A stretch of DNA of 64,000 nucleotides from Haliotis rubra (GCF_003918875.1 NW_025765476.1:1-64000); one strand, 5' to 3'. Shown: positions 1 through 62,526, numbered from the stretch's first letter. Translations and numbers: made by a program. The notes: a model not told the origin generated them from the letters alone.

Positions 1-767
1 AACGATGCTGCCAAGAAACATCATCTGGTCAAGAAGTTCCACCACCGAGAACAACGCCGGCGGTAAACAACTACATGAACGCCTCAACTACAACAGGAAG
101 GACTACAAGGATAACTTTGCCCAGAACGCTAACGCTGCCAGCTCTAATGCCAACAACGCTACGCTCAGTAGGTATTACAACGATGCCGCCAACAGCAGCC
201 CACAACAACGACAAATACGCCGCCAACAAACGCTGATAACGCCTACAAATACACACAATGACGTCGCTCAGGCCGCCAACGGCAAACGCTGCGCAAGAAA
301 TTCGAACTACTACAGCCAGGACGCGCTGCTAAAGCTGCCGGGGCAACAACAAATGCCGCTGCTTCTAAAATACAACGACTACAACAAAGCTGCTGGTGCC
401 CGCCAGCGTCCTCAACAACTACGCCCACGACAACTATGTGCTCCAGTAATGCCCGTGCCCATTCTAACGGTCATGGCGCTGCTACCAACCACGCCGCCAC
501 CGCGCCAACACGGAACCCCTACAACAACGGCTTTCGTGTTGGTCGAAGTTGGTATCGGTAATGGAGTTGGTGTCGGACAGAGTTGGTATCGGTCATGGAG
601 TTGGTGTTGGACGTAACGTTGGTATCCGGTCATAGGTTAGTGTCCGGAAAGAGAGAGTCGGAGGGTTCCGGGTAGGAAATGGCGTCGCCGGCGTTGGATT
701 CGGCCGTGGCCTTGCTGGAGGTTTTCTGGAGGAGGCTAAGAACGGGCGTTCACCAGCACATTACTAG
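1..767 (+). pseudogene. Paralogue A (B-type), 3' part of exon 2 only; many apparent frameshifts (pseudogene or consensus errors)
   Basis: DNA matches the reverse complement of gene B (gccaagaaacatcatctggtcaagaagttccaccac = AKKHHLVKKFHH; ...cattacTAG stop at 765-767). The 3' UTR at 768-1250 matches 18100-18541 reversed, with AATAAA at 1120-1125. Numerous small insertions break the frame. Confidence 0.85.
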
Positions 768-2759
768 ACACAGACATAAGCTCATAGGTTTATTGGGATC
801 ACGAAGTTTAATGATGTTTTTGTCTACAATTTTATACTGTTTGATACCTTTACGTACTTCTTCAGAAAGAATTGTGGGTGTCCCATCTTTCCTTTTGTAA
901 ATATACTTCTTCCATGAACTTGGCTACAGACATAATTTTTGTTCTTAGAATTACTATCTCGAGGTGACTAAATCTAGTCACCGTTTCTTCCAGCAGTTTT
1001 GCCAATTAGGATTTTTCGAACCTTTATACCGCGATATCAAGACATCTTTCGTCTATGTTGAGATATCATCTCATTGAGAATTGATGCAGATCTCAGTCAT
1101 GTGTTGTCCTGCTTGTCTGAATAAATAATTCTTTGAGAACATGATCTAATTTTCTGCTTTTATGTCAGGTCACTAAGTCTTATAAAGCGGCTTATGTAGA
1201 AATACACTAACTGGACAATAATTCAGTGAGATTTCACGGGGGTTGGTATTCTATCATTTACCTACGCCAATTGAGCTTTTGTTGGAGCCAAGCACTTGGA
1301 ACACATGGCATAATTTATTAACTTCTAAATAATGAGAGGACATTGTTCATTTACTGTACAGTCAGAGAGATTACAAAGGTTGATTATTTTCACCATCAGT
1401 TCCAATCTCCACTCAAGTTTAATGTACGGGACTATTTGCGAGATCATGTACTCAAAGGCGAAAGTAACTCTCATTATAAGAATAAACTAATAATAATTGA
1501 CAATAATAATATTTTTGAGGATAAGTTCTCGGCAGGATTAGAGCCAGCCAATAATAGTGTATCTATCGGGGACATTTACGTACCAGAATCCTGTAAAGTT
1601 TGGTGAGAGATCAGACCAGTTGCATCATTGTTTATAAACAAAATCTTATTTATCGCCCTTGTCAACCTGTGGTTAGAGGTTAGAATTCAACCATAGTGAC
1701 TCGGAATCTTTCATTTTAGTGATCTGTTCGCATAATTTTCTTCGTTGTTTGCCTTTGCATTGGAATACAATGTGTTTTTGCATCGAACTGTTTTAACACA
1801 ATATGGGGAATGAGTGGCACTTGTTTACGCCATGCTCGATAATCATGCGTGGAAGGAAATACAGTCACAACAGACTGATGATGAGGAAAAAGGAGAGCGT
1901 ATCCTCTTGTTTAGCTTGACAATGCTCCGTCCCACCCCTCAAGGAGACGCATGAAAGTGCTCAGCAATGTTACAGTGAAATGAATAACTTCATTAAAATC
2001 TGGACAATAATGCACCTGGACTTTTTTAGTCAGTCCCAAGCTGGTCCGAATTAGACAGAGTGCACTGTATACCAAACAGACTTGGCGCGAGGAAGGAAAA
2101 TTCCATTACAATATTACTATATCTAACGTAAGGTTTGGTCCTCGATATCGTTGGAACCTTATAAAGGACTCACGGCATTCAGCGACAGCATCATATGACT
2201 AATCACTTTAGAAACCATCACCTGCAAGCGTACGGAATCCTTGGCAGATTTCTGTGTGACTATATTTAAATGTGATTTTATCTTTTTCACAATTATACTG
2301 AAAAAGAAGGATGCGTGCACTCAGGAACTTTATATATTTCGTTTCTACTTCGCTTTTGGTTATTTTCAGCATTCAATGCGCTCTTTTCGATTCACGTACT
2401 TCCCTAATTGTAAGCCTTTATCGTCATCATTATTCATGAAGGTTATTTAAAGAAGTTTTAATGAGCGCCTCTAAACTAAACCAGTAATAAAGAGACCTCT
2501 AGTTGGTAGAACCTAGTACATGTAGGAATTTCATTGGACATCCGTCAGGGTCTCGATGGTGTATTTCCACGTATAAAATAGAAACAGCAGCCAAGCTGTT
2601 ACTAAGTGCACGTGAACTTCAAGGGTGACTTGTCATCTTTCGCTTGAGTGGTTTCTGGAAGACATACAGCACCAGCACGTGGATGTCGCTTAGTGTAATC
2701 TTCGCACACGATGCGTAGGTATGGTGGAACGTGTCAGTCGACAAATCCGTAGAAGTACC

Positions 2760-7721: not shown

Positions 7722-8724
7722 AATATCTTCTTAGTGGCATAATTAATTTTTCTAAAATATAATGCTGGTATAGATGTCAGTAAGGAGAAAATTTCTGGTT
7801 TTGTGAAGCCTGTACTGCCGATCACAGTACAACTCTTTTCATTAGAACTATACAGCCGTGAGCATAAATCTGAGAACTGTCTGAGGAACTGACTGTGGAA
7901 CTACTGTCTTTCCAAGCTCATGGGTTATTACCTGTGCGGATTAAGGTGCTTATTGCCCAGTTATGTATTTATAGATAAGCCGTTTAATAAAGGCTCAGTA
8001 ACCTGGCATAAAGGAAACCAGAAAACATGATCATATTCAAGAATTCTTTATTCCGACAAGTAAGACAACGCATGAGGGAGAGATTTACATCAGTCCTTGA
8101 AATTAGTCAATCTCAGCATAGACGAAAAATCTTAACACCATGGTCTACAGGGGCGAAACATCTTGATTGGTAAACTGCAGGGGAGAAATGGTGTTGGATT
8201 TGATTACTTCGGTCTTATAATTCGCATTAGAAAAACAAATTCTGTAAGGTTTCATGGAATCTATGTTCACAAATGGAAAGATCGACAAACACATAAAGAA
8301 ATTACGGTCATAAGCGTATCAAAATTAAATTGTGAAAAACATATGAGTTGAGAGATCTGCATTATACTCTTTGAAAGTAGCCAATATACACGAAGATGTG
8401 CAGTAACACCACAGTACTAAGAGGGTCGAAAACTCTAATTCTGCCATGATTTCAGTAAATACTGGATTGTGATTAGTTAATCAAAGTCAGTCAGAGGTAT
8501 ATAATCACGTTATATACCAGCGCTTTTGAGCATGCACTAGTTGCCTGAATATGTGCGCCGTATACCAATATCCTACTCAATTAGGGAGATAAACATACTG
8601 TATTTGGAAAATCAGAGGTATATAACGAAATTATAATAGCTCCTAAATTTGATTTAAAACCAGAACGCGTAGCATTATATACCTCTGATTTTTCAACACA
8701 GTACGTTTATCTCCATTACTGCCA

Positions 8725-10270
8725 TACCACCATTATGCTCTTCCATCCATACCATGTTGGCATCCATTCCTCCAATATTCTGTGTGTTGTCCTTCACCAT
8801 CCATTCCTTCCTTCATTTCTTTATATTTATGGCTTCCATATTCTTCTCATGTCCTTTCTTTATCTATGTCTATATACCCTTTTCCCTTTCAGCAAATCCA
8901 TTTTCCTTCCTTTCCATTTCCACTTTCCATTTCTTTCCATTTCTTTTCACCATATGCCATGCACCATATCCACTCCATTATTTATTCCATATTATTCTTT
9001 ATTTTTCATGTCCATTATTTTCTTTTTATTTCCCTGTAGATGTCATGGCTTTTCGTGTGTGTTTATTCCTGTTTCTTCACTGCATTATTTATAATCCATT
9101 ATTCCTTTATTATTCCACTATCCTCCTTTTGCTACTGCCCATCCATATATGCGTTCCATTTCTGCCATTACCATTGGCTGTATCCATTATATTTATTCCA
9201 CTTGTTATTGCTGTCATATTTATTAAACTACATTGCCTTTGTCATTATACTCATGGTGTGTGCAGTGCCGTTCATTTCCGTTATCCTTGTGTCCCTTCTT
9301 ATTTATGCATTCATGTTATTTCCTTTGTTATTTATGTGTTTCTGTGTGTTCTTGCTGTGTCATTTTCTTCTGTCTATGAGTTATCCATGTTATCCATGTG
9401 TTGGCATCCACTTCCTTTGTGTCATATCCATGTCTATCAGATACACTGCCTCCAGTGTGGATCTATGGCTGTTATTCTGTCTGCTGTTATATGGCGTCGT
9501 TGATTCCTGTGTGCTGTGTTCTCTGTGTCATTCCGTGGATCCATATTTTGTGCTGTGCTGCAAGTTGTGTGTGTCCTTCCTTCTGTCCGTTCTGTCCATG
9601 TGTGTGTCCATGTGTTGTCCTGTGCTGTGCTGTCATGTTCCATGCTTTCGTTCCTTCCTGTGCCACGTGTTCCATGGGGTTTCCGTGGTTGTGTTCTGTC
9701 ATGGGCTGTGATTCTTTGCTGTGTCGTGTCTTCTTGTCGTGTGTCATGTGTGCTTCCACTCTTGTCACCATGCCTTCTGGCTGTGCATTTGTCTGTGTGT
9801 GTCCTGTGATTCCTGTGTCCATGTCCTTTGGGGTTATGGCTGCTGTGTCCGTTCATGTCCTCCTCGTTGGGGTGTGTGTCAGTGTGTGTGTGTGTGCTGT
9901 GGTTGATTGTCTTTCCTGTCATGGTCTCATGTGTTTCCTTTGTTGCATGTCCATGTCCTTCTGTGTGTTCCATGTGTCCTTTCTGTGTGTGGGTGTCAGT
10001 CAGTGTGTGGTGTGTGTCCTTTTCCGTGGTTGTTGGCCTGTGTGGTCTTCGTTGATTCTGGATGGTCCTGTGTGTTCCTGGGTCTTCTGATTCTGTCGTT
10101 ATCTGTCTGGTGACTCCTTCTCCTGTTGTGTGGTGTCCCTGTGTCGTGTCCGTGTTCATGTTCCTGTGTATGGGAGGCCACATTTGGCTGGGGCTTTCTT
10201 GTATCACCACCTTCATCTTGACTCCACAGGGCTGTTTCCTCTGTCTGGGAGATAAGATCCGGTCTGTGTC
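8725..10270 (-). pseudogene. Hidden B-type paralogue in garbled, A-depleted sequence
   Basis: Anchors collinear with gene B: 9281 ttatccttgtgtcccttctt ~19101; 9431 tgtctatcagat...gtggatct ~19320; 9538 gatccatattt ~19476; 9584 tgtccgttctg ~19569; exon-1 homologue accttcatcttgactccacagg at ~10209-10230; 3' UTR homologue 7950-8340 with polyA signal at 8047-8052. Confidence 0.75.
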
Positions 10271-10739: not shown

Positions 10740-12010
10740 GTCATTCTTCCTCCTTCCACTCCTACCTCTGTTCTAATTCTATCCCAACTTCCTTTATTTC
10801 TACCCTACATCTTGCTCTGTCCTTCTACTGTTATCCCCTGCCTCTTCTCACTCCTTACTTCTCCTACCTCTGTTCCTACCCTATCCCAACTTTTATTTCT
10901 ACCTCTACATCTCCTGTCCTCTTCTACTGTTATCCCTGCCTCTTCTTCTTCTCACCTCTACTTCTCTATACCTCTGTTCTAATCTCTATCCCTAACTTTT
11001 ATTTCTACCTCTACATCTACCTGTCCTTCTAGTGTTATCCCCTGCTACTCACCTTCTTCTCCCACCCTGTTCCCAATCCTCATCCCAACTTTATTTCACC
11101 TCTACATCTACCTGTCCTTCTACTTGTTATCCCTGCCTCTTTCTACCTAATTCTACTCTCCCCCTGTGTCTCTAAAATCCTATCTCAACTTTTTATTTCT
11201 ACCTCTACACCTGCCTGTCCTTCTACTGTTATCCTGCCTCTTCTACTCAATTCTACTTTTCATACCCCTGTTCTATTCCTATCCCAACTTTTATTTCTAA
11301 TTCTACACCTGCCTGTGCTTCTACTGTTATCCCTGCCTCTTCTTTCTACCTCTACTTCTCCTACCCTTGTTCCAACCTCTATCCCAACTTTATTTTTTCT
11401 ACTTCTACACCTGCCTGTCCTTCTACTGTTATCCCTGCCTCTTCTACTACCTCTACTTCTCCTACCTCTGTTCTACCCTATCCCAACTTTTATTTCTACC
11501 TCTACATCTGCCTGTCCTTCTACTGTTATCCCTGCCTCTTCTTCTACCTCTACTTCTCCTACCTCTGTTCTACCTTATCTCAACTTTTTATCTTCCTTTA
11601 CACTCTACACCTGCCTGTGCTTCTACTGTTATCCCTGCCTCTTCTTCTACCTCTACTTCTCCTACCTCTGTTCGACCGTATCCCAACTTTTATTTCTACC
11701 TCTACATCTACCTGTCCTTCTACTGTTATCTCAGCCTCTTCTTCTACCTCTACTTCTCCTACCTCTGTTCTACCATATCCCAACTTTTATTTCTACCTCT
11801 ACATCTACCTGTCCTTATACTGTTATCCCTGCCTCTTCTTCTACCTCTACTTCTCCTACCTCTGTTCTACCCTATCCCAACTTTTATTTCTACCTCTACA
11901 TCTACCTGTCCTTCTACTGTTATCCCTGCCTCTTCTTCTACCTCTACTTCTCCCACCTCTGTTCTACCCTATTCCAACTTTTATTTCTACCTCTACATCT
12001 ACCTGTGCTT
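10740..12010. repeat. ~97-bp pyrimidine-rich tandem repeat, about 12-13 units (about 2-3 units at 21560-22090)
   Basis: Unit ctacctctacttctcctacctctgttctaccctatcccaacttttatttctacctctacatctacctgtccttctactgttatccctgcctcttctt; spacing 11821 to 11918 = 97. Confidence 0.9.
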
Positions 12011-12498
12011 CCTTTGTTTCTACTTCTGTTTCTTCTTCTGTTACAACTTCTCCTCCACTGCCTGTGCGTCTTCTTCTACGTCTTTTTCTTGTGTTCTACT
12101 TCTCCTCTACTTTGACTTCCGTTTCGAGTTCAGCATTCAACGTTTATACATTTGCCTCTACTTCTATGTCGTTATCTCTCCTTCTACTTCTTCCTCTACC
12201 TCCACTTCTAATTTTCATTCTTCCTCTACGTCTACTTCTACGCAACGATTATAATTCTTTTAAAGTGAAAACCCGTTTGTATTTTTCCGTGTGTTCCATA
12301 TGATAAGCGTTAGTTTGTAGGAAGAAACACGTTTCAGATTTAATAATCTGTGGATCACAATCGGACAAACTTCAATTAAGAAAGTATAATGTCTGATGTC
12401 TGATATAATGTGTTATACACATCAGTTCCTCCAGAACAACCAAGTAGACATAAGTGAAATACGAGTTTCACGCAAACATGCAGTGTTATAACCAATGA

Positions 12499-18541: not shown

Positions 18542-20653
18542 CTAGTAATACTGGTAGCCGCTCTTGGAGCCTCCGAAACCACCAGCAAGGCCACGGCCGT
18601 ATCCAACGCCGACGACGCCATTTCCGACTCCGAACCCCCCGAATCCCTTTCCGACACCAACTCCATGGCCGACACCAACGTCATGTCCAACTCCGAAGCC
18701 GTTGTTGTAGGGGGTTCCGTGTTGAGTGGCGGCGGCGTGGTTGGTAGCAGCGCCGTGTGCATTAGCATGGGCATTGGAATTGGAGCCATAGTTGTTGTGG
18801 GCGTAGTTGTTGAGGACGTTGGCGCGGGCAGCAGCAGCGTTGTTGTAGTCGTTGTATTTAGAAGCAGCGGCGTTGTTGCTGTCTCCGGCAGCTTTAGCAG
18901 CGCCCTGGCTGTAGTAGTTCGATTTCTTAGCAGCGTTGCCGTTGGCGGCCTGAGCGACGTCATTGTATTTGTAGGCGTTATCAGCGTTGTTGGCGGCGTA
19001 TTTGTCGTTGTTGTGGGCTGCTGCGTTGGCGGCGTCGTTGTAATACCTCTGAGCGTAGTTGTTGGCATTAGAGTGGGCAGCGTTAGCGTTCTGGGCAAAG
19101 TTATCCTTGTAGTCCTTCTTGTTGTAGTTGAGGCGTTCGTAGTTGTTACCGCCGGCGTTGTTGTGGTGGTGGAACTTCTTGACCAGATGATGTTTCTTGG
19201 CAGCGTCGTTGTAATTGCGTCTGTAGTTGTCCTTGGCGTAGGCAGAGTTGGCACTGTCGGCGGCAGCAGCTTGAGCATTGTAAAGGTTGGCAGCATCAGC
19301 ACCGGCGTGGTCGTATCCGTGTCTGTCAGATGCAGCAGCATCGGTGTTGGATCTGTAGGCGTTGTTCTTGTCAGCAGCAGCACCGGATTTGTAGTAGTCG
19401 TTGCCTTGAGCGTTGTTGTAGCCGTTCCTGTGGTAGGCAGCGCCGGCATTGTTTCTCTGGTAATCATTCAGGTGAGATCCATATTTACCATTCCTGACAT
19501 TGGCAGCATTGGCAGCGGAATCATAATGGTTGGCGTGTTGACCCTGGGCGGCGTTGTCGTACAGACCGTGTCCGTTCTGACCATATTGTTGACCATATTG
19601 CTGACCGTATTGTTGACCATATTGTTGACCTTTGCCGTAACCGTTGCCGTAGTTGTTCCCGTAACCGTTGCCTTTTCCGACACCTCCAGTGCCTACGACA
19701 CCAGAGAATCCGCGTGTTCCGTAGACGCCGTGGTTGCCGTGTCCAGCGAGGTTGTGTGCAGCTTGTGCAGCGGCGTTAGCGACGCTGTTTCTGTCGTAGA
19801 CGGCGTTCTTTTTGGCGAAGTTGTCGTACTGATCTTTGGAAGCGTCGTGAGCGTTGTCGTAGTATTTGTTGCTTCCAGCAGCTTCGCTCAACTTGGCAGC
19901 AGCGGCGTGGTTAGCAGCACCGTTGTTGGCAGCGTGGCTGGTTGCGGCACCGTATTTACCGTTTCCGTATTGCTTTGCTGCAGCGCCATGTCCGTACCCA
20001 TTGCCCTTCTGAGCGTGTGCGGCATCGGCGGCGTATTTTTTGTTGGCGTGGTCGCGGCTGGCGTAGTTGGCGGCTCCACTGTGATCACGGTAGTCGCCGA
20101 GGTTGTGAGCACTGCTTGTGTCAAGGATTTCGTAGTCACCATCCTCGTTGGAGTTTTTGTTGTATTTCTTGTCGAAGCCGTAGTTGACATCGGTGTTGAA
20201 AACGTCCCCCTTGTTGTAGTAGTTGTTGTTGGCGTGGTTGTTGTAAGCAGCAGCTCTTGCGGCGTTGTCTTTCCTGTCGTAGTGGTTGGCGGCGGCGTCG
20301 TGGTAGCCGGCTTTGTTGGCGTGTCCGGCGTCACCGTAAGCGTTATTGGCGTGGGCGGCGGCCTTGTTTCCGTAATAGTTGGAGGCAGCGTCTCCCTTGG
20401 CGCCGGCTTTATCAGCTGCTTTGTAGTAGTTGCTGCCGTGGCTGGCGTAGTTGTTGGCAGCTTTGTTGTAGTTGTTGGCGGCGTTGTCGTATGTGTTGTA
20501 TTTCTGGTCAGTGTTTTGATTAGCGTATTGTCCTTTCCCGTAGTTGTTGACGCCGGCTGACAGGTGGCCGTTGTTGGCGGCGGCGCCATAGTTGTCGAGG
20601 TAGTCGCATGTGGCAGCAGCCACACAGATGGCGATGACGGCAATGGAGAAACT
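18542..20653 (-). CDS. Gene B exon 2: secreted Ala/Asn/Gly/Tyr/His-rich structural protein (705 aa with exon 1; MK|SFSIAVIAICVAAATC signal peptide)
   Basis: Open 703-codon exon after acceptor gttttcAG (20655-20654); hydrophobic signal peptide; strong codon bias (AAC, TAC, GCC); polyA signal at 18193-18198; paralogous to C-F. Confidence 0.93.
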   Translation of the reverse strand, partial: SFSIAVIAICVAAATCDYLDNYGAAANNGHLSAGVNNYGKGQYANQNTDQKYNTYDNAANNYNKAANNYASHGSNYYKAADKAGAKGDAASNYYGNKAAAHANNAYGDAGHANKAGYHDAAANHYDRKDNAARAAAYNNHANNNYYNKGDVFNTDVNYGFDKKYNKNSNEDGDYEILDTSSAHNLGDYRDHSGAANYASRDHANKKYAADAAHAQKGNGYGHGAAAKQYGNGKYGAATSHAANNGAANHAAAAKLSEAAGSNKYYDNAHDASKDQYDNFAKKNAVYDRNSVANAAAQAAHNLAGHGNHGVYGTRGFSGVVGTGGVGKGNGYGNNYGNGYGKGQQYGQQYGQQYGQQYGQNGHGLYDNAAQGQHANHYDSAANAANVRNGKYGSHLNDYQRNNAGAAYHRNGYNNAQGNDYYKSGAAADKNNAYRSNTDAAASDRHGYDHAGADAANLYNAQAAAADSANSAYAKDNYRRNYNDAAKKHHLVKKFHHHNNAGGNNYERLNYNKKDYKDNFAQNANAAHSNANNYAQRYYNDAANAAAHNNDKYAANNADNAYKYNDVAQAANGNAAKKSNYYSQGAAKAAGDSNNAAASKYNDYNNAAAARANVLNNYAHNNYGSNSNAHANAHGAATNHAAATQHGTPYNNGFGVGHDVGVGHGVGVGKGFGGFGVGNGVVGVGYGRGLAGGFGGSKSGYQYY

Positions 20654-20896
20654 CTGAAAACAGAATATACACACTTGCTTTAACTTTGAATATCTGTTTG
20701 AGTGGCTCTCAGAATCTACAAGCATTTAATTAAAAATTACAATTCAGGTATCACCTGTACAAAAGCCGCTGATGGGTATGTCGCCATCATTCACATCATC
20801 AGTGTTTATAGTATGGGGGGGAGATAATTTGCATACACATTTTGAAACTGAGCGAACTACTGAAATAGGAAGCAAGACGTTTCAACTGTATCTTAC

Positions 20897-20902
20897 CTTC
20901 AT
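20897..20902 (-). CDS. Gene B exon 1 coding part (ATG AAG, MK) followed by GTAAGA donor; 243-bp phase-0 intron
   Basis: gtcaagATGAAG|gtaaga; the same micro-exon structure occurs in C, D and E. Confidence 0.85.
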
Positions 20903-20973
20903 CTTGACTCCCACAGGTGTTTCTCTGTCTGGAGATGAGATCCAAGTGTGGAGACTCGCCGGCAGTGTCCGTC

Positions 20974-21075
20974 TTTTAAAGCACAAACCATTTCCCATTA
21001 AACTTCACGAGACGCTGATAACGGTAACTGTGCGATCCGCTTCGCTGGACACTCAAGTCTATTGTCGTAAAGTTA
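20974..21075 (-). promoter_or_regulatory. Gene B promoter: TTTAAAA TATA-like box and AACTTTACGAC motif
   Basis: TATA-like sequence at 20974-20980, about 70 bp upstream of the ATG; motif at 21064-21074 is shared with the C/D/E promoters. Confidence 0.55.
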
Positions 21076-26618: not shown

Positions 26619-26771
26619 GTGAGGTAACGCGGCCATCTGCCACCACCCGTCTCTCTACGGCCTCGGTTTAATGACGGAGCTGCCATTGTTTGATTAAAGA
26701 AGGTGGTCGCGGTGTGATCCCTCGTTATGGTCCATTTAAACTTTACGACGATGAAGACGATGGTTTATAAG
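26619..26771 (+). promoter_or_regulatory. Gene C promoter: GTGAGGTAAC, GCCATTGT, TTAAACTTTACGACG, TATAAG
   Basis: Motifs at 26619-28, 26682-89, 26736-50 and 26766-71, in the same order as in the D and E promoters. Confidence 0.75.
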
Positions 26772-26850
26772 GAGTGTTGATGCAGGGAGACAGCAGATCA
26801 GCCAGCCCTTCAGCGGACACAGGCACAGACACAGACAGGCAACAGTCAGA

Positions 26851-26856
26851 ATGCAG
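26851..26856 (+). CDS. Gene C exon 1 coding part (ATG CAG, MQ) followed by GTGAGA donor
   Basis: About 80 bp downstream of the TATA; phase 0 into exon 2; same layout as the paralogues. Confidence 0.85.
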
Positions 26857-34020: not shown

Positions 34021-36198
34021 CTAGTAGTAGGGATAGTGTCCCACCCCTGTGTTCACTCCGAACCCTCCCACAGCACCAAATCCCTTCCCAAGGCTAGAAA
34101 CTCCCTTTATAACGCCTGCAGCGTTGTTGAAGCTACCGACGTGGTTTCCAAGACCGACAACTCCTTTACCCACACCGACCCCGTTACCGAAGCCGCGAAA
34201 GCCGTGACCAAGGCCGACAACTCCATGTGCAGATCCTCCGTGTCCGACACCGTAACCGTAGCTTAGGGTGTCGTGGGTGGCATCGGCATGGTGGGCAGCA
34301 GCACCGTGAGCGGCGTTGTAGGCGTGGCCGTTGTTACCGTACTGGTTATGGGCGTAGTCGTTGAGACCCTTGGCATACGTAGCAGCGGCGTTGTTGTGGT
34401 TGTCATAATAGGATTTGCCAGCAGCGTTGGCAGCACCAGCAGAGGCAGCGGCATTTTTGTTATAGTAGTTGGATTTCTTTGCGGCGTTTCCGTTGGCAGC
34501 ATCAGCAGCATCGTAGTAGTTGGAGGCTTTGTTGGCGTGGTTGGCAGCATATTTGTCGTTGTTATGGGCGGCGGCGTTGGCAGCGTTCTGGTACAGGTTC
34601 TGAGAGTACTTCTTTGCGTTGGCATGAGCGGCATTGGCGTTCTGTCCAAAGTTGTCCCTGTAGTCCTTCTTGTCGTAGTTGAGACGCTCGTAGTTGTTGC
34701 CGCCGGTTTTAGAATGATGGTGGAACTTCTTGACCAGATGGTGTTTCTTGGCACCCTCGTTGTACTTACGTCTGTAGTCGTCCTTGGCGTAGGCAGATTT
34801 GGCATTGTCGTGAGCGGCGGCTTTGTTGTCATAGAGACTGGCAGCGTCGGCACCGGCGTGACTGAAGCCATGGTTGTTGGCAGCGGCACCGTCCTTGTTG
34901 TATCTGTAGGCGTTGTTGTTGCCAACTGCAGCTCCAGACTTGTAGTAGTCGTTGGCGTGAGCGTTGTTGTTACCGTCTCTGTGATAGGCGGCACCGGCCT
35001 TGTTTCGGCTTGAGTCACCAAGTTTAGATCCGTATCCTCCGGTTTTGGCGACGGCGGCATTGGCAGCACCATCATAGTGGTTAGCGTGTTGACCTTGGAC
35101 GGCGGCACCGTAGTACTTGTTGTTGTGTGCGTCATGTCCCAGGTAGCCATTGTTGTATCCGTGGCCGTACTGGTTACCGTAGCCCTTGCCGTATCCTACT
35201 CCTTTGCCGAGAAGACCTCCAGACACACCTAGAACACCAGCACCACCAGCGACGCCATGGGCACCATGGGCGAGACCTCCATATCCGGCGATGTTTTTGG
35301 CAGCCTGTGCAGCAGCATTAGCAGCGTTCCTTCTGTTGTAGTAGGCGTTCTTGCCAGCGAAGTCGTCATGTTTGTTGACGGCAGCATCGTGGGCGTTGGC
35401 GTAGTATTTGTTGCTTCCGGCAGCTTCGTTAAGTTTGCTGTCGTAACCGTGGTTGGCAGCACCGTTCTTGGCAGCGTGGCTAGCAGCAGAGCCGTATTTA
35501 CCGTTACCATACTGAGCCTTGCTGGCGTCCTTACCGTACTTGCTGTCTTTCAGAGCATGAGATCGATCAGCAGCATATTTGTTGGCGGCGTGGTCTCTGT
35601 TGGCAGCGCTGTAAGCCTTGTTCTTATCACGGTATTCGTCGAGGTTGTGGGAAGAGCTGTCATCAAGAATTTCGTAGTCCCCGCCCTCATCGGCGTTCTT
35701 GTTATACTTCTTGTCGAAGCCGTAGTGGACTCCGGTGTTGTAGACGTCCCCCTTTCTGTAGTAGTTGTTGTTGGCGTAGTCGTTGTTGGCAGCAGCTTTG
35801 GAGGCATCGTCCTTCTTTGCGTACTTTGTGGCAGCAGCATCGTGGTAGTTGGCTTTGTTGGCCAGAGCGGCAGCACCGAAGGCTTTGTCAGCGTGAGCGG
35901 CGTTCTTGTGGCCGTAGTAGTTGGAGGCGGCGTCTCCCTTTGCGCTGGCATGGTCAGCAGCCTTGTGGTAGTCGTTACCGTGGGCGGCGTAGTTGTCTGC
36001 GGCTTTGTTGGCGGCATTGGCGGCTTTGTTGTAGCTTCCGTAACGACGAAGACCCTCGGCGCCTCCATATCGTCCTTTGCCGTAGTCGTTGAGACCCGAG
36101 GCAACGTGGCCAAGCTGTGCGGCAGCTCCAAAGTTGTTGTTGTAGGACATGCTGGATACGACAACGCCGCACAGAGCGACGAAGGCGACGAGGAGACA
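34021..36198 (-). CDS. Gene D exon 2: secreted Ala/Asn/Gly/Tyr/His/Lys-rich structural protein (727 aa total)
   Basis: Acceptor tttttcAG at 36200-36199; CLLVAFVALCGVVVSS signal peptide followed by the 709-aa ORF; highly similar to C/E/F; candidate polyA signal at 33613-33618. Confidence 0.95.
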   Translation of the reverse strand, partial: CLLVAFVALCGVVVSSMSYNNNFGAAAQLGHVASGLNDYGKGRYGGAEGLRRYGSYNKAANAANKAADNYAAHGNDYHKAADHASAKGDAASNYYGHKNAAHADKAFGAAALANKANYHDAAATKYAKKDDASKAAANNDYANNNYYRKGDVYNTGVHYGFDKKYNKNADEGGDYEILDDSSSHNLDEYRDKNKAYSAANRDHAANKYAADRSHALKDSKYGKDASKAQYGNGKYGSAASHAAKNGAANHGYDSKLNEAAGSNKYYANAHDAAVNKHDDFAGKNAYYNRRNAANAAAQAAKNIAGYGGLAHGAHGVAGGAGVLGVSGGLLGKGVGYGKGYGNQYGHGYNNGYLGHDAHNNKYYGAAVQGQHANHYDGAANAAVAKTGGYGSKLGDSSRNKAGAAYHRDGNNNAHANDYYKSGAAVGNNNAYRYNKDGAAANNHGFSHAGADAASLYDNKAAAHDNAKSAYAKDDYRRKYNEGAKKHHLVKKFHHHSKTGGNNYERLNYDKKDYRDNFGQNANAAHANAKKYSQNLYQNAANAAAHNNDKYAANHANKASNYYDAADAANGNAAKKSNYYNKNAAASAGAANAAGKSYYDNHNNAAATYAKGLNDYAHNQYGNNGHAYNAAHGAAAHHADATHDTLSYGYGVGHGGSAHGVVGLGHGFRGFGNGVGVGKGVVGLGNHVGSFNNAAGVIKGVSSLGKGFGAVGGFGVNTGVGHYPYY

Positions 36199-37525: not shown

Positions 37526-37531
37526 CTTCAT
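37526..37531 (-). CDS. Gene D exon 1 coding part (ATG AAG) followed by GTAAGA donor
   Basis: cagcATGAAG|gtaagag; ATATAAG about 45 bp upstream. Confidence 0.85.
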
Positions 37532-37573
37532 GCTGATGGAGAGAGTGTTGTGCCTGGGCTCTGTGTTGCCTGA

Positions 37574-37740
37574 CTTATATCCCTCCGTAGTCAACGTCGT
37601 AAAGTTTAACTGTAGCTTAATGAGGGGTCATATCATCACCGGTGTCGTTAAAGAGACAATGGCGGTCCCGTCATGAAATCAACTTCAATGAAAGGGGTTT
37701 GAGTCAGACAATAGTGTTACCTCACTCACGGCGGGGGAGG
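37574..37740 (-). promoter_or_regulatory. Gene D promoter: TATA, TTAAACTTTACGACG, CCATTGT, GTGAGGTAAC
   Basis: 37574-80, 37595-609, 37656-63, 37716-25; ~165-bp block conserved with the gene E promoter. Confidence 0.75.
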
Positions 37741-43877: not shown

Positions 43878-46001
43878 TTACCCGTAGTAAGGGTACTGGT
43901 TATAACCTCCATAGCCTCTACCAAGGCCGGCAACTCCGTTCCCGAATCCACTGACGCCGTTACCAAGGCCGGCAACTCCGTTCCCGAATCCACTGACGCC
44001 GTTACCAAGGCCGACAACTCCACGGCCAGCTCCTCCAAGTCCGTGTCCGACACCGTACCCGTAGCTGGGGGCGTTGTGGGCGGCACCGGCGTGGTTGACA
44101 GCAGCACCGTGAGCGACGTTGAAAGCGTGACCGTTGTTACCGTACTGGTTGTGGGCGTTGTCGTTGAGGCTCTTGGCCTTGGCAGCAGCGGCGTTGTTGT
44201 GGTTGTAATGAAGAGACTTGGCGGCAGCGTTGGCAGCACCAGCAGAGGCAGCGGCGTTTTTGTTGTAGTAGTTGGATTTCTTTGCGGCGTTTCCGTTGGC
44301 AGCATCAGCAGCATCGTAGTAGTTGGAGGCTTTGTTGGCGTGGTTGGCCGCATATTTGTCGTTGTTATGGGCGGCGGCATTGGCAGCGTTCTGGTACAGG
44401 TTCTGAGAGTATTTCTTTGCGTTGGCATGAGCGGCATTGGCGTTCTGTCCAAAGTTGTCCCTGTAGTCTTTCTTGTCGTAGTTGAGACGCTCGTAGTTGT
44501 TGCCGCCGGCCTTAGAATGATGGTGGAACTTCTTGACCAGATGGTGTTTCTTGGCACCCTCGTTGTACTTTCGTCTGTAGTCGTCCTTGGCGTAGGCAGA
44601 TTTGGCATTGTCGTGAGCGGCGGCTTTGTTGTCATAGAGACTGGCAGCGTCGGCACCGGCGTGACTAAATCCATGGTTGTTGGCAGCGGCACCGTCCTTA
44701 TTGTATCTGTAGGCGTTGTTGTTGGCAGCTGCAGCTCCAGACTTGTAGTAGTCGTTGGCGTGAGCGTTGTTGTAGCCGTCTCTGTGATAGGCGGCACCAG
44801 CCTTGTCTCGGCTAGAGTCAGCCAGTTTAGATCCGTATCCTCCAGATTTGGCAAGGGCGGCATTGGCAGCACCATCATAGTGGTCAGCGTGTTGACCTTG
44901 GGCGCCGGCATCGTAGTACTTGTTGTTGTGTGCATCATGTCCGAGGTAGCCATTGTTGTATCCGTGGCCGTACTGGTTACCGTAGCCCTTGCCGTATCCT
45001 ACTCCTTTGCCGAGAAGACCTCCAGATACACCTAGAACACCAGCACTACCAGCGACGGCATGGGCACCATGGGCGAGACCTCCATATCCGGCGATGTTGT
45101 TGGCAGCCTGTGCAGCAGCATTAGCGGCGTTCCTTCTGTTGTAGTAGGCGTTCTTGCCAGCGAACTCGTCATGTTTGTTGACGGCAGCATCGTGGGCGTT
45201 GGCGTAGTATTTGTTGCTTCCGGCAGCTTCGTTGAGTTTGCCGTCGTAGCCGTGGTTGGCAGCACCGTTCTTGGCAGCCTGACTAGCTGCAGAGCCGTAT
45301 TTACCGTCACCGTATTGAGCCTTGCTGGCGTCCTTACCGTACTTGCTGTCTTTCAGAGCATGAGAGCGACCAGCAGCATATTTGTTGGCGGCGTGGTCTC
45401 TGTTGGCAGCGCTGTAAGCCTTGTTCTTATCACGGTATTCGTCGAGGTTATGGGAAGAGCTGTCATCAAGAATTTCGTAGTCACCGCCATCATCGGCGTT
45501 CTTGTTATACTTCTTGTCGAAGCCGTAGTGGACTCCGGTGTTGTAGACGTTCCCCTTTCTGTAGTAGTTGTTGTTGGCGTAGTCGTTGTTGGCAGCAGCT
45601 TTGGAGGCATCGTCCTTCCTTGCGTACTTTGTGGCAGCAGCATCGTGGTAGTTGGCTTTGTTGGCCAGAGCGGCAGCACCGGAGGCTTTGTCAGCGTGAG
45701 CGGCGTTCTTGTGGCCGTAGTAGTTGGAGGCGGCGTCTCCCTTTGCGCTGGCATGGTCAGCAGCCTTGTGGTAGTCGTTACCGTGGGCGGCGTAGTTGTC
45801 GGCGGCTTTGTTGGCGGCATTGGCCGCTTTGTTGTAGCTTCCGTAACGACGAAGACCCTCGGCGTCTCCATATTGTCCCTTGCCGTAGTCGTTGAGACCC
45901 GAGGCGACGTGGCCAATCTGCCTGGCAGCGCCAAAGTTGTTGTTGTAGGACATGCTGGATACGACAACGCCGCACAGAGCGACGACGGCGACGAGGAGAC
46001 A
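43878..46001 (-). CDS. Gene E exon 2: secreted Ala/Asn/Gly/Tyr/His/Lys-rich structural protein (709 aa total)
   Basis: Acceptor ttttcAG at 46003-46002; signal peptide CLLVAVVALCGVVVSS; intact ORF; polyA signal at 43456-43461. Confidence 0.95.
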   Translation of the reverse strand, partial: CLLVAVVALCGVVVSSMSYNNNFGAARQIGHVASGLNDYGKGQYGDAEGLRRYGSYNKAANAANKAADNYAAHGNDYHKAADHASAKGDAASNYYGHKNAAHADKASGAAALANKANYHDAAATKYARKDDASKAAANNDYANNNYYRKGNVYNTGVHYGFDKKYNKNADDGGDYEILDDSSSHNLDEYRDKNKAYSAANRDHAANKYAAGRSHALKDSKYGKDASKAQYGDGKYGSAASQAAKNGAANHGYDGKLNEAAGSNKYYANAHDAAVNKHDEFAGKNAYYNRRNAANAAAQAANNIAGYGGLAHGAHAVAGSAGVLGVSGGLLGKGVGYGKGYGNQYGHGYNNGYLGHDAHNNKYYDAGAQGQHADHYDGAANAALAKSGGYGSKLADSSRDKAGAAYHRDGYNNAHANDYYKSGAAAANNNAYRYNKDGAAANNHGFSHAGADAASLYDNKAAAHDNAKSAYAKDDYRRKYNEGAKKHHLVKKFHHHSKAGGNNYERLNYDKKDYRDNFGQNANAAHANAKKYSQNLYQNAANAAAHNNDKYAANHANKASNYYDAADAANGNAAKKSNYYNKNAAASAGAANAAAKSLHYNHNNAAAAKAKSLNDNAHNQYGNNGHAFNVAHGAAVNHAGAAHNAPSYGYGVGHGLGGAGRGVVGLGNGVSGFGNGVAGLGNGVSGFGNGVAGLGRGYGGYNQYPYYG

Positions 46002-47843: not shown

Positions 47844-47849
47844 CTTCAT
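47844..47849 (-). CDS. Gene E exon 1 coding part (ATG AAG) with Kozak-like GCCACCATG, followed by GTAAGA donor
   Basis: agccaccATGAAG|gtaagag; TATATAAG at 47889-47896. Confidence 0.88.
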
Positions 47850-47888
47850 GGTGGCTGAGATGATGTGTCAAGTCTCTCTCTTGCCAGG

Positions 47889-48055
47889 CTTATATACCTG
47901 GCCATTCAACGTCGTAAAGTTTAACTGTAGCTTAATGAGGGGTCACGTCGCCACCGGTGTCGTTGAAGAGACAATGGCTGCCCCATCATGAAATCAGCTT
48001 CCATGAAAGGGTTTGCGTCAGATAAAAGTGTTACCTCACTCACGGCAGGGGAGGT
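47889..48055 (-). promoter_or_regulatory. Gene E promoter: TATATAAG, TTAAACTTTACGACG, CCATTGT, GTGAGGTAAC
   Basis: 47889-96, 47910-24, 47971-78, 48030-39. Confidence 0.75.
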
Positions 48056-53126: not shown

Positions 53127-53220
53127 TTCATCTGTGATAGCCTAGAGGCTAGAGCGTTCTCGTCACGCCGAAGACCCGGGTTGGACTCGCCACATGGGTA
53201 CAATGTGTGAAGCCCATTTC

Positions 53221-58153: not shown

Positions 58154-58158
<5 letters not shown>

Positions 58159-60371: not shown

Positions 60372-62526
60372 TTACCCGTAGTAAGGGTACTGGTTGTAAC
60401 CTCCATAACTTTGACCAGAGCCAAAGCCTCTACCAAGGCCGGCAACTCGGTTACCGAATCCACCAACGCCATTTCCAAGGCCGACAACTCCTCTGCCGAA
60501 ACCACTACCGTATCCACTGACGCCGTGACCAAGGCCGACAACACCATGTCCAGTTCCTCCAAGTCCGTGTCCGACGCCATAACCGTAGCTTGGGGTGTTG
60601 TGGGCGGCACCGGCGTGGTTGGCAGCAGCACCGTGGGCGACGTTGAAAGCGTGACCGTTGTTACCGTACTGGTTGTGGGCGTAGTCGTTGAGGCTCTTGG
60701 CGTTGGCAGCAGCGGCGTTGTTGTGGTTGTCATAATGAGACTTGCCAGCAGCGTTGGCAGCACCAGCAGAGGCAGCGGCGTTTTTGTTGTAGTAGTTGGA
60801 TTTCTTTGCGGCGTTTCCGTTGGCAGCATCAGCAGCATCGTAGTAGTTGGAGGCTTTGTTGGCGTGGTTGGCAGCATATTTGTCGTTGTTATGGGCGGCG
60901 GCATTGGCAGCGTTCTGGTACAGGTTCTGAGAGTACTTCTTTGCGTTGGCATGAGCGGCATTGGCGTTCTGTCCAAAGTTGTCCCTGTAGTCCTTCTTGT
61001 CGTAGTTGAGACGCTCGTAGTTGTTGCCGCCGGCTTTAGAATGATGGTGGAACTTCTTGACCAGATGGTGTTTCTTGGCCCCCTCGTTGTACTTACGTCT
61101 GTAGTCGTCCTTGGCGTAGGCAGATTTGGCATTGTCGTGAGCGGCGGCTTTGTTGTCATAGAGACTGGCAGCGTCGGCACCGGCGTGACTGAAGCCATGG
61201 TTGTCGGCAGCGGCACCGTCCTTATTGTATCTGTAGGCCTTGTTGTTAGCAGCTGCAGCTCCAGACTTGTAGTAGTCGTTGGCGTGAGCGTTGTTGTAAC
61301 CGTCTCTGTGATAGGCGGCACCAGCCTTGCTTCGGCTGGAGTCACCCAGCTTAGATCCGTATCCTCCGGTTTTGGCGACGGCGGCATTGGCAGCACCATC
61401 ATAGTGGTCAGCGTGTTGACCGTGTGCGCCGGCATCGTAGTACTTATTGTTGTGTGCATCATGTCCGAGGTAGCCATTGTTGTATCCGTGGCCGTACTGG
61501 TTACCGTAGCCCTTGCCATATCCTACTCCTTTGCCGAGAAGACCTCCAGATACACCTCGGACACCAGCACCACCAGCGACGCCATGGGCACCATGGGCGA
61601 GACCTCCATATCCGGCGATGTTGTTGGCAGCCTGTGCAGCAGCATTAGCAGCGTTCTTTCTGTTGTAGTAGGCGTTCTTGCCGGCGAACTCGTCATGTTT
61701 GTTGACGGCAGCATCGTGGGCGTTGGCGTAGTATTTGTTGCTTCCGGCAGCTTCGTTAAGTTTGCCATCGTAACCGTGGTTGGCAGCACCGTTCTTGGCA
61801 GCCTGACTTGCCGCAGAGCCGTATTTACCATTACCGTATTGAGCCTTGCTGGCGTCCTTACCGTACTTGCTGTCTTTCAGAGCATGAGAGCGATCAGCAG
61901 CATATTTGTTGGCGGCGTGGTCGCGGTTGGCAGCGCTGTAGGCCGCATTCTTATCACGGTATTCGTCGAGGTTATGGGAAGAGCTGTCATCAAGAATTTC
62001 GTAGTCACCGCCCTCATCGGCGTTCTTGTTATACTTCTTGTCGAAGCCGTAGTGGACTCCGGTGTTGTAGACGTTCCCCTTTCTGTAGTAGTTGTTGTTG
62101 GCGTAGTCGTTGTTGGCAGCAGCTTTGGAGGCATCGTCCTTCCTTGCGTACTTTGTGGCAGCAGCATCGTGGTAGTTGGCTTTGTTGGCCAGAGCAGCAG
62201 CACCGGAGGCTTTGTCAGCGTGAGCGGCGTTCTTGTGGCCGTAGTAGTTGGAGGCGGCGTCTCCCTTTGCGCTGGCATGGTCAGCAGCCTTGTGGTAGTT
62301 GTTACCGTGGGCGGCGTAGTTGTCGGCGGCTTTGCTGGCGGCATTGGCCGCTTTGTTGTAGCTTCCGTAACGACGAAGACCCTCGGCGCCTCCATATTGT
62401 CCCTTGCCGTAGTCGTTGAGACCCGAGGCAACGTGGCCAAGCTTGTCTGGCAACGCCAAAGTTGTTGTTGTAGGACATGCTGGATACGACAACGCCGCAC
62501 AGAGCGACGACGGCGACGAGGAGACA
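60372..62526 (-). CDS. Gene F exon 2: paralogue with a 1-bp insertion at 62443-62444 (sequencing error or young pseudogene); exon 1 lies beyond the window
   Basis: Acceptor at 62528-62527. agacAAgcttggc versus agacAgcttggc in gene C shifts the frame to a stop at 62302. The remaining ~690 codons are intact. The intron is homologous to the gene E intron up to the window end; polyA signal at 59914-59919. Confidence 0.85.

What the first reader, a model, noticed from the sequence alone, without database searches (positions are those of the whole stretch)
1..62526. Seven-copy tandem family of secreted Tyr/His/Lys-rich structural proteins in two subfamilies
Seen: B-type (A, the hidden copy, B) and C-type (C, D, E, F) genes in mixed orientation, all intact ones with a 2-codon first exon and a signal peptide. 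Tails consist of GVVGLG-type repeats ending in YY or YYG. Established: Tyr (DOPA/dityrosine), His and Lys are the cross-linking and metal-binding residues of sclerotised invertebrate biomaterials. Inference: a dosage-amplified material protein (periostracum, shell matrix, radula, operculum or egg coat); the tissue cannot be determined from sequence. The two subfamilies could co-assemble.
Basis: partly seen in the sequence, partly recalled or inferred. Interest (0 to 1): 0.7.

Follow-up and report, generated by a model that had tools for sequence, protein, structure and literature searches.

The report
Abalone secreted fibre-protein gene cluster
An abalone genome carries a tandem cluster of at least eight genes for a secreted, Ala/Asn/Gly/Tyr-rich protein of about 700 residues that belongs to an undescribed snail-wide family with two length-invariant, probably helical arms, most likely a building block of some non-calcified secreted material whose tissue is still unknown.

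Summary
The window, which is the first 64 kb of contig C586 of a Haliotis genome, carries B-type copies A, the relic H and B, and C-type copies C, D, E and F, in mixed orientation. B, C, D and E are intact: a TATA promoter, a two-codon exon 1, one phase-0 intron and a 2.1-kb exon 2. F has a 1-nt frameshift. A is cut by the contig start and full of small indels. H keeps its promoter, exon 1 and flanks, but its exon 2 is unrecognisable.

The proteins are Ala 21%, Asn 13-17%, Gly 13-15%, Tyr 10%, Lys 6-8%, His 6%, with no Cys and pI about 9. dN/dS is 0.22-0.31 and codon bias is strong.

New here: they belong to an uncharacterised gastropod family (Gigantopelta, Lottia, Haliotis, Nucella, Pomacea) with no Pfam or PDB match. 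It has two conserved motifs and two arms of fixed length, 238-243 and 225-232 residues, at only 20-40% identity. The arms show heptad periodicity. The linker and tail are Gly-rich and vary in length.

The calcified-shell reading is disfavoured: the motifs or gene IDs are missing from three shell proteomes. I obtained no RNA evidence, so the tissue stays open.

The parts
1..760 (+). Copy A: 3' third of a B-type exon 2, cut by the start of contig C586, with about ten small indels relative to B.
   Evidence: 88.8% DNA identity to B. Indels are shown in alignment A4. The window is C586:1-64000. A fuller counterpart lies at C613:6589-8538.
7921..8294 (-). 3' flank of the relic copy H, homologous to the 3' flank of B.
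   Evidence: 71.7% identity over 381 nt, E 8e-57.
8727..10199 (-). Body of relic H. It is not recognisable as coding sequence, its composition is abnormal (T 6% or C 4-16% on the minus strand), and it is about 1.2 kb shorter than intron, exon 2 and flank together should be.
   Evidence: The counterpart X at C613:60-1585 keeps a recognisable B-type coding sequence.
10200..10260 (-). Relic H: 5'UTR plus exon 1 (ATG 10216-10214, AAG, then GT).
   Evidence: 85% identity to B 20887-20943, E 4e-9. Sequence read.
10759..12011 (-). 97-nt purine-rich satellite (12.6 copies) upstream of H. A short version lies upstream of B at 21572-21772.
18542..20653 (-). Gene B exon 2: 703 codons plus stop, intact.
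20654..20896 (-). Gene B intron (GT..AG, phase 0).
20897..21071 (-). Gene B exon 1 coding part (ATG AAG, 20902-20897), TATA-like TTTAAAAG (20980-20973) and the TTTACGAC motif (21071-21064).
26742..26856 (+). Gene C promoter module (TTTACGAC 26742-26749, TTTATAAGG 26764-26772) and exon 1 coding part (ATG CAG, 26851-26856).
27435..29582 (+). Gene C exon 2, intact. The intron is 26857-27434.
34021..36198 (-). Gene D exon 2, intact. The intron is 36199-37525.
37526..37603 (-). Gene D exon 1 coding part (ATG AAG, 37531-37526) and promoter module with TTTACGAC (37603-37596).
43878..46001 (-). Gene E exon 2, intact. The intron is 46002-47843. The tail contains a 42-nt repeat at 43919-44021.
47844..47918 (-). 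Gene E exon 1 coding part (ATG AAG, 47849-47844), TATATAAG (47896-47889) and TTTACGAC (47918-47911).
60372..62526 (-). Gene F exon 2, C-type. A 1-nt insertion near 62443 shifts the frame about 30 codons into the exon. Exon 1 lies beyond the window.

Best explanation
The window holds most of a tandem cluster of at least eight genes in a Haliotis genome. An eighth copy, G, lies at C586:73135-75064. Each gene encodes a secreted protein of about 72 kDa.

Each gene has a TATA promoter with a conserved AACTTTACGAC element, a two-codon first exon (Met-Lys or Met-Gln), one phase-0 intron and one large exon.

The mature protein has four parts:
- arm 1, about 243 residues;
- a Gly-rich linker;
- arm 2, about 232 residues;
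- a Gly/Val/aromatic tail ending in YY(G).

The genes belong to an uncharacterised family found across gastropods. I infer that the arms are long amphipathic alpha-helices with a heptad repeat, that is, a coiled-coil-type rod whose length is under constraint. I further infer that the Gly-rich linker and tail are flexible, and that the abundant Tyr, His and Lys allow covalent or metal-mediated curing after secretion. On this reading the protein is a fibre or sheet scaffold of a non-calcified secretion, such as periostracum, radula or jaw matrix, larval operculum or gut cuticle, and the tandem amplification supplies dosage.

Shown: the gene structures, the family membership, the length invariance of the arms, the heptad signal, purifying selection and codon bias. 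Inferred: secretion, the coiled-coil fold, the cross-linking chemistry, the role as a material and the tissue.
For: - Copies and gene models.
- Composition: Ala 21, Asn 13-17, Gly 13-15, Tyr 10, Lys 6-8, Asp 6.5, His 6%; no Cys or Trp; pI 9.0-9.4.
- Selection and codon use: dN/dS 0.22-0.31. AAC is 86-91% of Asn codons, TAC 85% of Tyr codons, and GCG is almost unused.
- Family: a profile search of 1.84 billion proteins gave 13 hits. Every hit with a species name is a gastropod, apart from one labelled Enterococcus that is probably a contaminant. All hits share the motifs YGFDKK[YF]NK..G.[YF]E..H.LD and KKF.H..GGNN[YF]ERL.[YF], and the full-length ones also share an MK-plus-hydrophobic N-terminus.
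- Arm length: 238-243 and 225-232 residues in nine proteins from four gastropod orders at 20-40% identity. The linker varies from 29 to 68 residues and the tail from 22 to 194.
- Heptad signal: the period of conserved hydrophobic columns in arm 1 is exactly 3.50 (p = 0.0005), with its 2.33 harmonic (p = 0.009). Arm 2 shows 2.33 (p = 0.002), 7.0 (p = 0.018) and charge at 7.0 (p = 0.0045). A period of 11/3 is absent. Registers 3 and 6 carry 32-33% large hydrophobic residues against 2-7% in most of the other registers, and 17% in one.
- Structure prediction: both AlphaFold runs place long helices in the arms, broken at the two motifs, with a coil linker and tail.
Against: - No RNA evidence for these genes could be obtained.
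- No close orthologue appears in the protein collections, although RefSeq proteins of H. rufescens and H. cracherodii are present there. The genes are therefore either unannotated or restricted to part of the genus.
- AlphaFold confidence is very low (pLDDT 29-36), so disorder is equally compatible with those models.
- Only about a third of the a/d-like positions hold large hydrophobic residues, which is weak for a classical coiled coil.
- The material and tissue are unknown.
- F, G and A carry frameshifts.
Confidence: 0.6

Rival explanations
1. The proteins are intrinsically disordered secreted proteins that act through phase separation or gelation, as a coacervate, an adhesive or mucus component, or an impregnating matrix like squid histidine-rich beak proteins or mussel foot proteins. 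They would not form ordered helical rods.
For: AlphaFold pLDDT is 29-36 over the whole length. The composition is low-complexity Ala/Asn/Gly/Tyr/His/Lys with no Cys. The two arms show no detectable internal homology.
Against: Arm length is conserved to within a few residues across four gastropod orders at 20-40% identity, while the linker and tail vary freely. A phase-coherent 3.50-residue hydrophobic period runs over about 260 residues. Disordered proteins normally tolerate indels. The family motifs are absent from the one held supplement of the limpet pedal-mucus proteome, which is weak evidence.
Confidence: 0.25
2. They are components of the calcified shell matrix, a nacre or prismatic framework protein in the manner of GAAP, shematrins or KRMPs.
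For: The signal peptide, the Gly-rich tail ending in Tyr, the basic pI and the low-complexity composition resemble known shell framework proteins.
Against: Six invariant motifs are absent from 6.2 million characters of H. laevigata shell-proteome supplements, and likewise from the H. asinina supplements. Lottia proteins 238000 and 238001 are absent from the text and supplements of the Lottia shell proteome. GAAP as described (507 aa, pI about 12, GGSGGxGFG and GN repeats) is a different protein.
Confidence: 0.07
3. The cluster is an unexpressed or decaying array of pseudogenes or recently dead genes. That would explain why it is missing from annotated abalone proteomes.
For: Copies A, F and G carry frameshifts and H has lost its exon 2. 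No transcript-derived proteins were found.
Against: Four copies keep uninterrupted 2.1-kb ORFs, intact splice sites and TATA promoters, with dN/dS 0.22-0.31 even at dS above 1. The assembly itself has indel problems: the orthologue of a RefSeq Haliotis protein at C613:1505841-1507856 shows five frame changes. The frameshifts may therefore be errors.
Confidence: 0.05
4. They are secreted hydrophilic protectant proteins, LEA-like or apolipoprotein-like 11-mer amphipathic helices, that act in desiccation or stress protection of surfaces rather than as a structural material.
For: The sequence is Ala/Lys/Asn/Asp-rich, hydrophilic and helix-prone. Ala alone shows a weak period of about 11 in copy E.
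Against: The family-level hydrophobic period is 3.50, not 11/3 (p = 0.97 for 3.67). There is no Pfam LEA or apolipoprotein match. The 10% Tyr and the Gly/aromatic tail are not LEA-like.
Confidence: 0.03

Closest known systems
Uncharacterised gastropod proteins with automatic names: Gigantopelta aegis XP_041357648 'filaggrin-2-like', Lottia gigantea LOTGIDRAFT_238000 and 238001, Haliotis cracherodii XP_071088974 'sericin 1-like' and H. rufescens XP_048243638, Nucella lapillus KAL8558913, Pomacea canaliculata XP_025087494 'fibroin heavy chain-like'
   Same: True homologues, with profile E-values from 3e-66 to 1e-7. They share the signal peptide, both conserved motifs, the two arms of fixed length, the Gly-rich linker and the Gly/aromatic tail.
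   Different: Identity is only 21-36% and composition differs (Gln/Lys/Asp-rich or Trp/Arg-rich instead of Ala/Asn/Tyr). They are single or paired genes, whereas this cluster has at least eight tandem copies. None was found in the papers searched by accession.
Intermediate-filament keratins with their type I and type II gene clusters, and high-Gly/Tyr keratin-associated proteins
   Same: Works alike in outline: heptad-bearing rod segments of conserved length separated by linkers, variable Gly/Tyr-rich end domains, tandem clusters of paralogues, and ancient paralogue types. One family member's tail hits Pfam PMG, a Gly/Tyr keratin-associated family.
   Different: These proteins have a signal peptide, whereas intermediate filaments are cytoplasmic. 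There is no Pfam Filament match. The hydrophobic core positions are sparsely filled. Heteropolymer formation is untested.
Coiled-coil silks of bees, ants and hornets, and whelk egg-capsule proteins (both recalled from memory)
   Same: Secreted, Ala-rich, heptad-based structural proteins encoded by small clusters of paralogues. The whelk proteins are also from gastropods.
   Different: No sequences were at hand to compare. Bee silk proteins are about 330 residues with one rod. Abalone and limpets make no egg capsules. Only one weak Nucella hit appeared, so the capsule proteins are probably not members.
GAAP_HALAI (HasCL10contig2), the Gly/Ala/Asn-rich abalone shell protein
   Same: Abalone origin, signal peptide, rich in Gly, Ala and Asn, with low-complexity repeats.
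   Different: GAAP is 507 residues with pI about 12 and GGSGGxGFG and GN repeats, and it is abundant in shell proteomes. The proteins here are about 700 residues with pI 9-9.4 and 10% Tyr. Their motifs are absent from those proteome files.
Squid histidine-rich beak proteins and suckerins, and Nereis jaw protein Nvjp-1 (recalled from memory)
   Same: Secreted Gly/Ala/His/Tyr-rich proteins of sclerotised, non-mineralised hard parts. The proposed Tyr/His chemistry is the same.
   Different: Those are built of short tandem peptide repeats with far more His and Gly. They have no conserved long arms, no heptad signal and no homology.

Membership tests
Uncharacterised gastropod two-arm secreted protein family (Lottia 238000/238001, Gigantopelta XP_041357648, Haliotis XP_071088974 and others) | Significant profile similarity over the whole length | tested here: met
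   hmmsearch with the profile of E, C, D and B gave E 3e-66, 4e-47, 1e-28, 3e-28 and 1e-22, with matches spanning both arms.
Uncharacterised gastropod two-arm secreted protein family | Arm-1 motif KG.V..D.I.YGFDKK[YF]NK...G.[YF]E....H.LD[DE].RD | tested here: met
   Y159, K163, K164, G173 and L186 are invariant in the 9-protein alignment A6.
Uncharacterised gastropod two-arm secreted protein family | Arm-2 motif K.[KR][FY].H.K..GG[ND]N.E[RK]L.[YF].[RK] | tested here: met
   K490, G499, G500, N502, E504 and L506 are invariant in A6.
Uncharacterised gastropod two-arm secreted protein family | Fixed arm lengths with a variable Gly-rich linker and tail, and an N-terminal signal peptide | tested here: met
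   Arms are 238-243 and 225-232 residues, the linker 29-68 and the tail 22-194. MK plus a hydrophobic N-terminus is seen in eight of the nine aligned proteins; one, from a marine metatranscriptome, starts differently.
Filaggrin / S100 fused-type proteins (the name RefSeq gives some homologues) | N-terminal S100 EF-hand domain followed by filaggrin repeats | tested here: not met
   No Pfam match at E up to 1 for E and B, and none for seven homologues.
Sericin / fibroin heavy chain (names RefSeq gives some homologues) | Ser-rich 38-residue repeats, or (GAGAGS)n crystalline blocks with the fibroin N-terminal domain | tested here: not met
   Ser is 5% and Gly 14%. No such repeats are visible in the sequence and there is no Pfam match.
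GAAP_HALAI shell protein | About 507 residues, pI about 12, GGSGGxGFG and GN repeats, abundant in shell matrix | tested here: not met
   Here the proteins are about 700 residues with pI 9.0-9.4 and no GGSGG repeat. The motifs are absent from the shell-proteome supplements. A direct alignment was not possible because the GAAP sequence was not at hand.
Coiled-coil fibrous proteins (a test of how it works, not of homology) | Long-range heptad periodicity of apolar residues | tested here: met
   Arm 1 shows period 3.50 (p = 0.0005) and 2.33 (p = 0.009). Arm 2 shows 2.33 (p = 0.002) and 7.0 (p = 0.018), but 3.5 is absent there.
Coiled-coil fibrous proteins (a test of how it works, not of homology) | Confidently predicted or measured alpha-helical rod | tested here: inconclusive
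   AlphaFold places helices at 48-143, 185-303, 369-483 and 517-640, but at pLDDT 29-36.
Intermediate filament proteins | Pfam Filament rod domain and cytoplasmic location | tested here: not met
   No Pfam match, and a signal peptide is present.
LEA group 3 / 11-mer amphipathic helix proteins | 11-residue (11/3) periodicity and a LEA_4 match | tested here: not met
   Power at a period of 3.67 is not above shuffles (p = 0.97 and 0.18). No Pfam LEA match.

The most novel reading that the evidence does not exclude
The family is the subunit of a gastropod-specific extracellular alpha-helical fibre or sheet, for example the banded alpha-type protein long described by electron microscopy and X-ray diffraction in whelk periostracum and operculum (recalled from memory, not checked). 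The two arms of about 35 nm would act as molecular rulers. The ancient clades, type I here and type II about 1.5 Mb away, would co-assemble as obligate partners in the way keratin types I and II do. That would make it a secreted analogue of intermediate filaments.
Probability: 0.2. Interest if true: 0.75.

Novelty: new variant of a known kind. Interest (0 to 1): 0.55.

Why it matters
Molluscan sclerotised materials such as periostracum, radula and jaw matrix, and operculum are mechanically remarkable, but their proteins are poorly known because they are insoluble and fall outside shell proteomics. This work defines a family that is conserved across at least four gastropod orders, has no Pfam entry and did not appear in the literature I could search. 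Its architecture, with fixed arm lengths and a heptad signal at only 20-40% identity, gives a concrete and testable model of an extracellular coiled-coil scaffold. The eight-copy abalone cluster, with its shared promoter element, offers probes for in situ hybridisation and peptides for targeted proteomics. If the material is identified, the family is a candidate template for recombinant Tyr/His-curable fibres.

Tried and rejected
- Word-index protein searches with full-length E, with the conserved core (residues 135-215) and with the N-terminal 110 residues found no relatives.
- Pfam gave only chance-level hits for E and B. The PDB profile search gave nothing. The ESM Atlas gave no look-alikes.
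- The one sequencing-run search returned only runs of unknown kind. Laid on gene E, their contigs cover the intron as well as the exon, so they are genomic and say nothing about expression.
- I tried to recover the hidden copy's exon 2 by local alignment, by transition-tolerant and T/C-wildcard scoring, and by short-word BLAST against B and against its C613 counterpart. Only two weak, collinear 24-28-nt hits appeared (E 0.09-0.24), so I rejected it as a recognisable coding sequence.
- The two arms are not an internal duplication.
- Literature searches by accession, by Lottia gene ID and by automatic protein name found nothing relevant. The radula transcriptome paper holds no supplements.
- All searches used exon 2 alone, by reference. 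The joined exon 1 plus exon 2 model was not sent to any search tool.


Full report
**What is in the window**

The window is the first 64 kb of contig C586 of a 1.38-Gb assembly. Earlier notes of this scan call the genome an abalone. I checked this: a locus on contig C613 encodes a protein 78-97% identical, piece by piece, to Haliotis cracherodii XP_071088974. The genome is therefore a Haliotis, though not that species.

ORF listing and tblastn show five long exon-2 reading frames of 703-725 codons:
- B: 18542-20653, minus strand
- C: 27435-29582, plus strand
- D: 34021-36198, minus strand
- E: 43878-46001, minus strand
- F: 60372-62526, minus strand

B is 60-63% identical in protein to C-F. 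C-F are 88-93% identical to each other.

Copy A (1-~760, plus strand) is the 3' third of a B-type gene. It is cut by the contig start, is 88.8% identical in DNA to B, and carries about ten small indels.

**Gene models**

All five genes with exon 2 share the acceptor TTTTCAG immediately before the codon that starts the hydrophobic signal sequence.

Upstream, B, C, D and E each carry a TATA box followed by ATG AAG|GTAAGA, or ATG CAG|GTGA in C. The ATGs are at 20902, 26851, 37531 and 47849. The introns are 243, 578, 1327 and 1842 nt long, all phase 0.

The spliced N-terminus is MK or MQ followed by CLLVAVVALCGVVVSS, or SFSIAVIAICVAAATC in B. I read this as a signal peptide. Homologues from other gastropods also start with MK plus a hydrophobic stretch, which independently supports the two-codon first exon.

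The octamer TTTACGAC occurs only four times in the window. Each occurrence is on the sense strand, 59-160 nt upstream of one of these four ATGs, and it also occurs in copy G's promoter outside the window.

F carries one extra base near 62443 that shifts the frame. Its exon 1 lies beyond the window.

All searches used exon 2 alone, by reference. The joined exon 1 plus exon 2 model was not sent to any search tool.

**The hidden copy**

On the minus strand, three pieces match B:
- 10200-10260 is 85% identical to B's 5'UTR plus ATG AAG GT (E 4e-9).
- 7921-8294 matches B's 3' flank.
- 10759-12011 is the same 97-nt purine-rich satellite that lies upstream of B.

The 1.5 kb between exon 1 and the flank cannot be aligned to any coding sequence by any scoring I tried. 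Its composition is abnormal, with T at 6% or C at 4-16% on the minus strand.

Contig C613 begins with what looks like the same locus in reverse. C613:5116-7098 matches window 2083-1 at 89% identity, and C613:1920-3079 matches window 8726-7533 at 93%. There, the counterpart of the hidden copy (C613:60-1585) keeps a recognisable B-type coding sequence, 77-81% identical in protein to B.

So the locus is real. Its body in this contig is either an assembly artefact at a noisy contig end or a degraded allele. I could not decide which, because my single read-laying run was already spent.

The assembly has indel trouble elsewhere too. The orthologue of the RefSeq Haliotis protein shows five frame changes, and copy G (C586:73135-75064, 95% identical to E) shows three. 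The frameshifts in A, F and G are therefore not proof of pseudogenes.

**The protein**

The mature proteins have 687-709 residues and weigh about 72 kDa. Composition is Ala 21%, Asn 13-17%, Gly 13-15%, Tyr 10%, Lys 6-8%, Asp 6.5%, His 6% and Ser 5%. There is no Cys or Trp and almost no Pro, Met, Ile or Glu. The pI is 9.0-9.4. 'Tyr/His/Lys-rich' is true but understates Ala, Asn and Gly.

dN/dS is 0.22-0.31 in every pair. That includes B against C-type, where dS exceeds 1. Codon use is strongly biased: AAC is 86-91% of Asn codons, TAC 85% of Tyr codons, and GCG is nearly absent. This is what one expects of heavily expressed genes, although that reading is an inference.

C, D and E differ by dS 0.11-0.17, yet outside the coding sequence only the promoter module can be aligned among them. 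This suggests homogenisation of the coding region.

**A family**

Pfam, the PDB and the word-index searches gave nothing.

The exhaustive profile search returned 13 proteins. Every hit with a species name is a gastropod, apart from one on a 993-bp contig labelled Enterococcus, which is probably a contaminant:
- Gigantopelta aegis 'filaggrin-2-like'
- two adjacent Lottia genes, 238000 and 238001
- a Haliotis 864-residue 'sericin 1-like' or 'filaggrin-2-like' protein
- Nucella lapillus
- Pomacea canaliculata 'fibroin heavy chain-like'
- transcripts from marine metatranscriptomes and other sources

Across the nine full-length proteins aligned, the architecture is the same: an arm with the motif YGFDKK[YF]NK...G.[YF]E...H.LD, a Gly-rich linker, an arm with KKF.H..GGNN[YF]ERL.[YF], and a Gly/aromatic tail. 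Eight of the nine also start with a signal peptide.

A maximum-likelihood tree gives three well-supported clades:
- type I: the abalone B and C types with Gigantopelta
- type II: Lottia 238001, the Haliotis 864-residue protein and Nucella
- type III: Pomacea and relatives

In this genome, two type II loci lie at C613:1.494 and 1.506 Mb. If the two contigs join head to head, that is about 1.5 Mb from the cluster.

**Arms as rods**

In nine proteins from four gastropod orders, at 20-40% identity, arm 1 is 238-243 residues and arm 2 is 225-232 residues. The linker ranges from 29 to 68 residues and the tail from 22 to 194.

Conserved hydrophobic columns in arm 1 have a period of exactly 3.50 (p = 0.0005 against column shuffles), with the 2.33 harmonic at p = 0.009. 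Arm 2 shows 2.33 (p = 0.002), 7.0 (p = 0.018) and charge at 7.0 (p = 0.0045). Periods of 3.6 and 11/3 are absent.

Two heptad registers, three and four positions apart, carry 32-33% large apolar residues. Four of the other registers carry 2-7% and one carries 17%. In the abalone proteins, these positions are often Tyr.

Both AlphaFold runs draw long helices in the arms, broken at the two motifs, with a coil linker and tail. Confidence is very low, pLDDT 29 and 36. The two arms are not detectably homologous to each other.

I read this as a secreted heptad-based rod protein. The alternative of a disordered protein is not excluded.

**What material?**

This remains unknown.

Negative evidence against calcified shell matrix:
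- Six invariant motifs are absent from the H. laevigata and H. asinina shell-proteome supplements.
- Lottia proteins 238000 and 238001 are absent from the Lottia shell proteome; the only hits to those numbers were intensity values.
- GAAP, the known Gly/Ala/Asn-rich abalone shell protein, is a different protein by its published description.

The family motifs are also absent from the held supplement of the limpet pedal-mucus study and from the scaly-foot snail supplements. That is weak evidence.

Periostracum, radula or jaw matrix, larval operculum and gut cuticle remain open. These materials are typically removed before shell proteomics or are insoluble.

**Verdict**

The added result is an undescribed gastropod-wide family with ruler-like heptad arms, amplified to at least eight tandem copies in this abalone.

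Noticed in passing
window 1-12500 and L009, L010, L012 (C613:1-10038): The starts of contigs C586 and C613 appear to represent the same locus in opposite orientation, at 89-93% identity with many indels. The two contigs probably join head to head, or they are haplotype copies. Both contig ends look like low-quality consensus sequence.
   Followed up: partly
window 8727-10199: A 1.5-kb stretch with strongly strand-asymmetric composition. On the minus strand T falls to 6% at 9600-10200 and C to 4-16% at 8800-9400. It replaces the intron, exon 2 and proximal 3' flank of a B-type gene. Whether it is an artefact or real degradation is unresolved.
   Followed up: partly
window 4000-6200: A 2.2-kb C+T-rich low-complexity block (GC skew -0.79, AT skew -0.60) made of degenerate 51-155-nt tandem units. 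The C613 version of this interval is about 3.4 kb shorter, which is enough to lack the block; I did not check this directly.
   Followed up: no
L008 (C613:1505841-1507856) and L006 (C613:1493575-1495712): Two type II family genes. One is the orthologue of H. cracherodii XP_071088974 (78-97% identity) but has five frame changes. The other is a 58-62% identical paralogue with one frame change. The frame changes are either assembly indels or pseudogenes.
   Followed up: partly
L007 (C586:73135-76016): An eighth copy, G, of C-type lies just outside the window. It is 95% identical to E, has the same promoter module (TTTACGAC, TATA, ATG AAG GT at 75947) and shows three frame changes.
   Followed up: partly
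window 21064-21071, 26742-26749, 37596-37603, 47911-47918: AACTTTACGAC is conserved in the promoters of both B-type and C-type genes, although the rest of those promoters no longer aligns.
   Followed up: partly
window 47350-47503: An extremely high-copy dispersed repeat inside the intron of gene E. Summed contig depth exceeds 900,000 in all four runs, with many junctions to unrelated sequence. It is probably a SINE.
   Followed up: no
window 31688-31759: A tRNA-like element just at the Rfam threshold (29.2 bits against a cut-off of 29). It lies inside a repeat that recurs at 13166, 23066, 32465 and 40414, so it is probably a tRNA-derived SINE.
   Followed up: no
window 50942-53127: A 37-nt satellite of 59 copies at 89% identity. 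It is followed at 53268-53759 and 57546-57768 by GCGAGAAA-type microsatellite arrays in inverted orientation.
   Followed up: no
window 49615-50020: ORFs that look like a remnant of a Tc1/mariner-type transposase (the VMVWGGI motif). I judged this by eye only.
   Followed up: no
window 41522-42951 and 16052-16461: A 128-nt tandem array in two blocks at 96-97% identity, and a 66/133-nt tandem array at 95-98% identity, both lying between genes.
   Followed up: no
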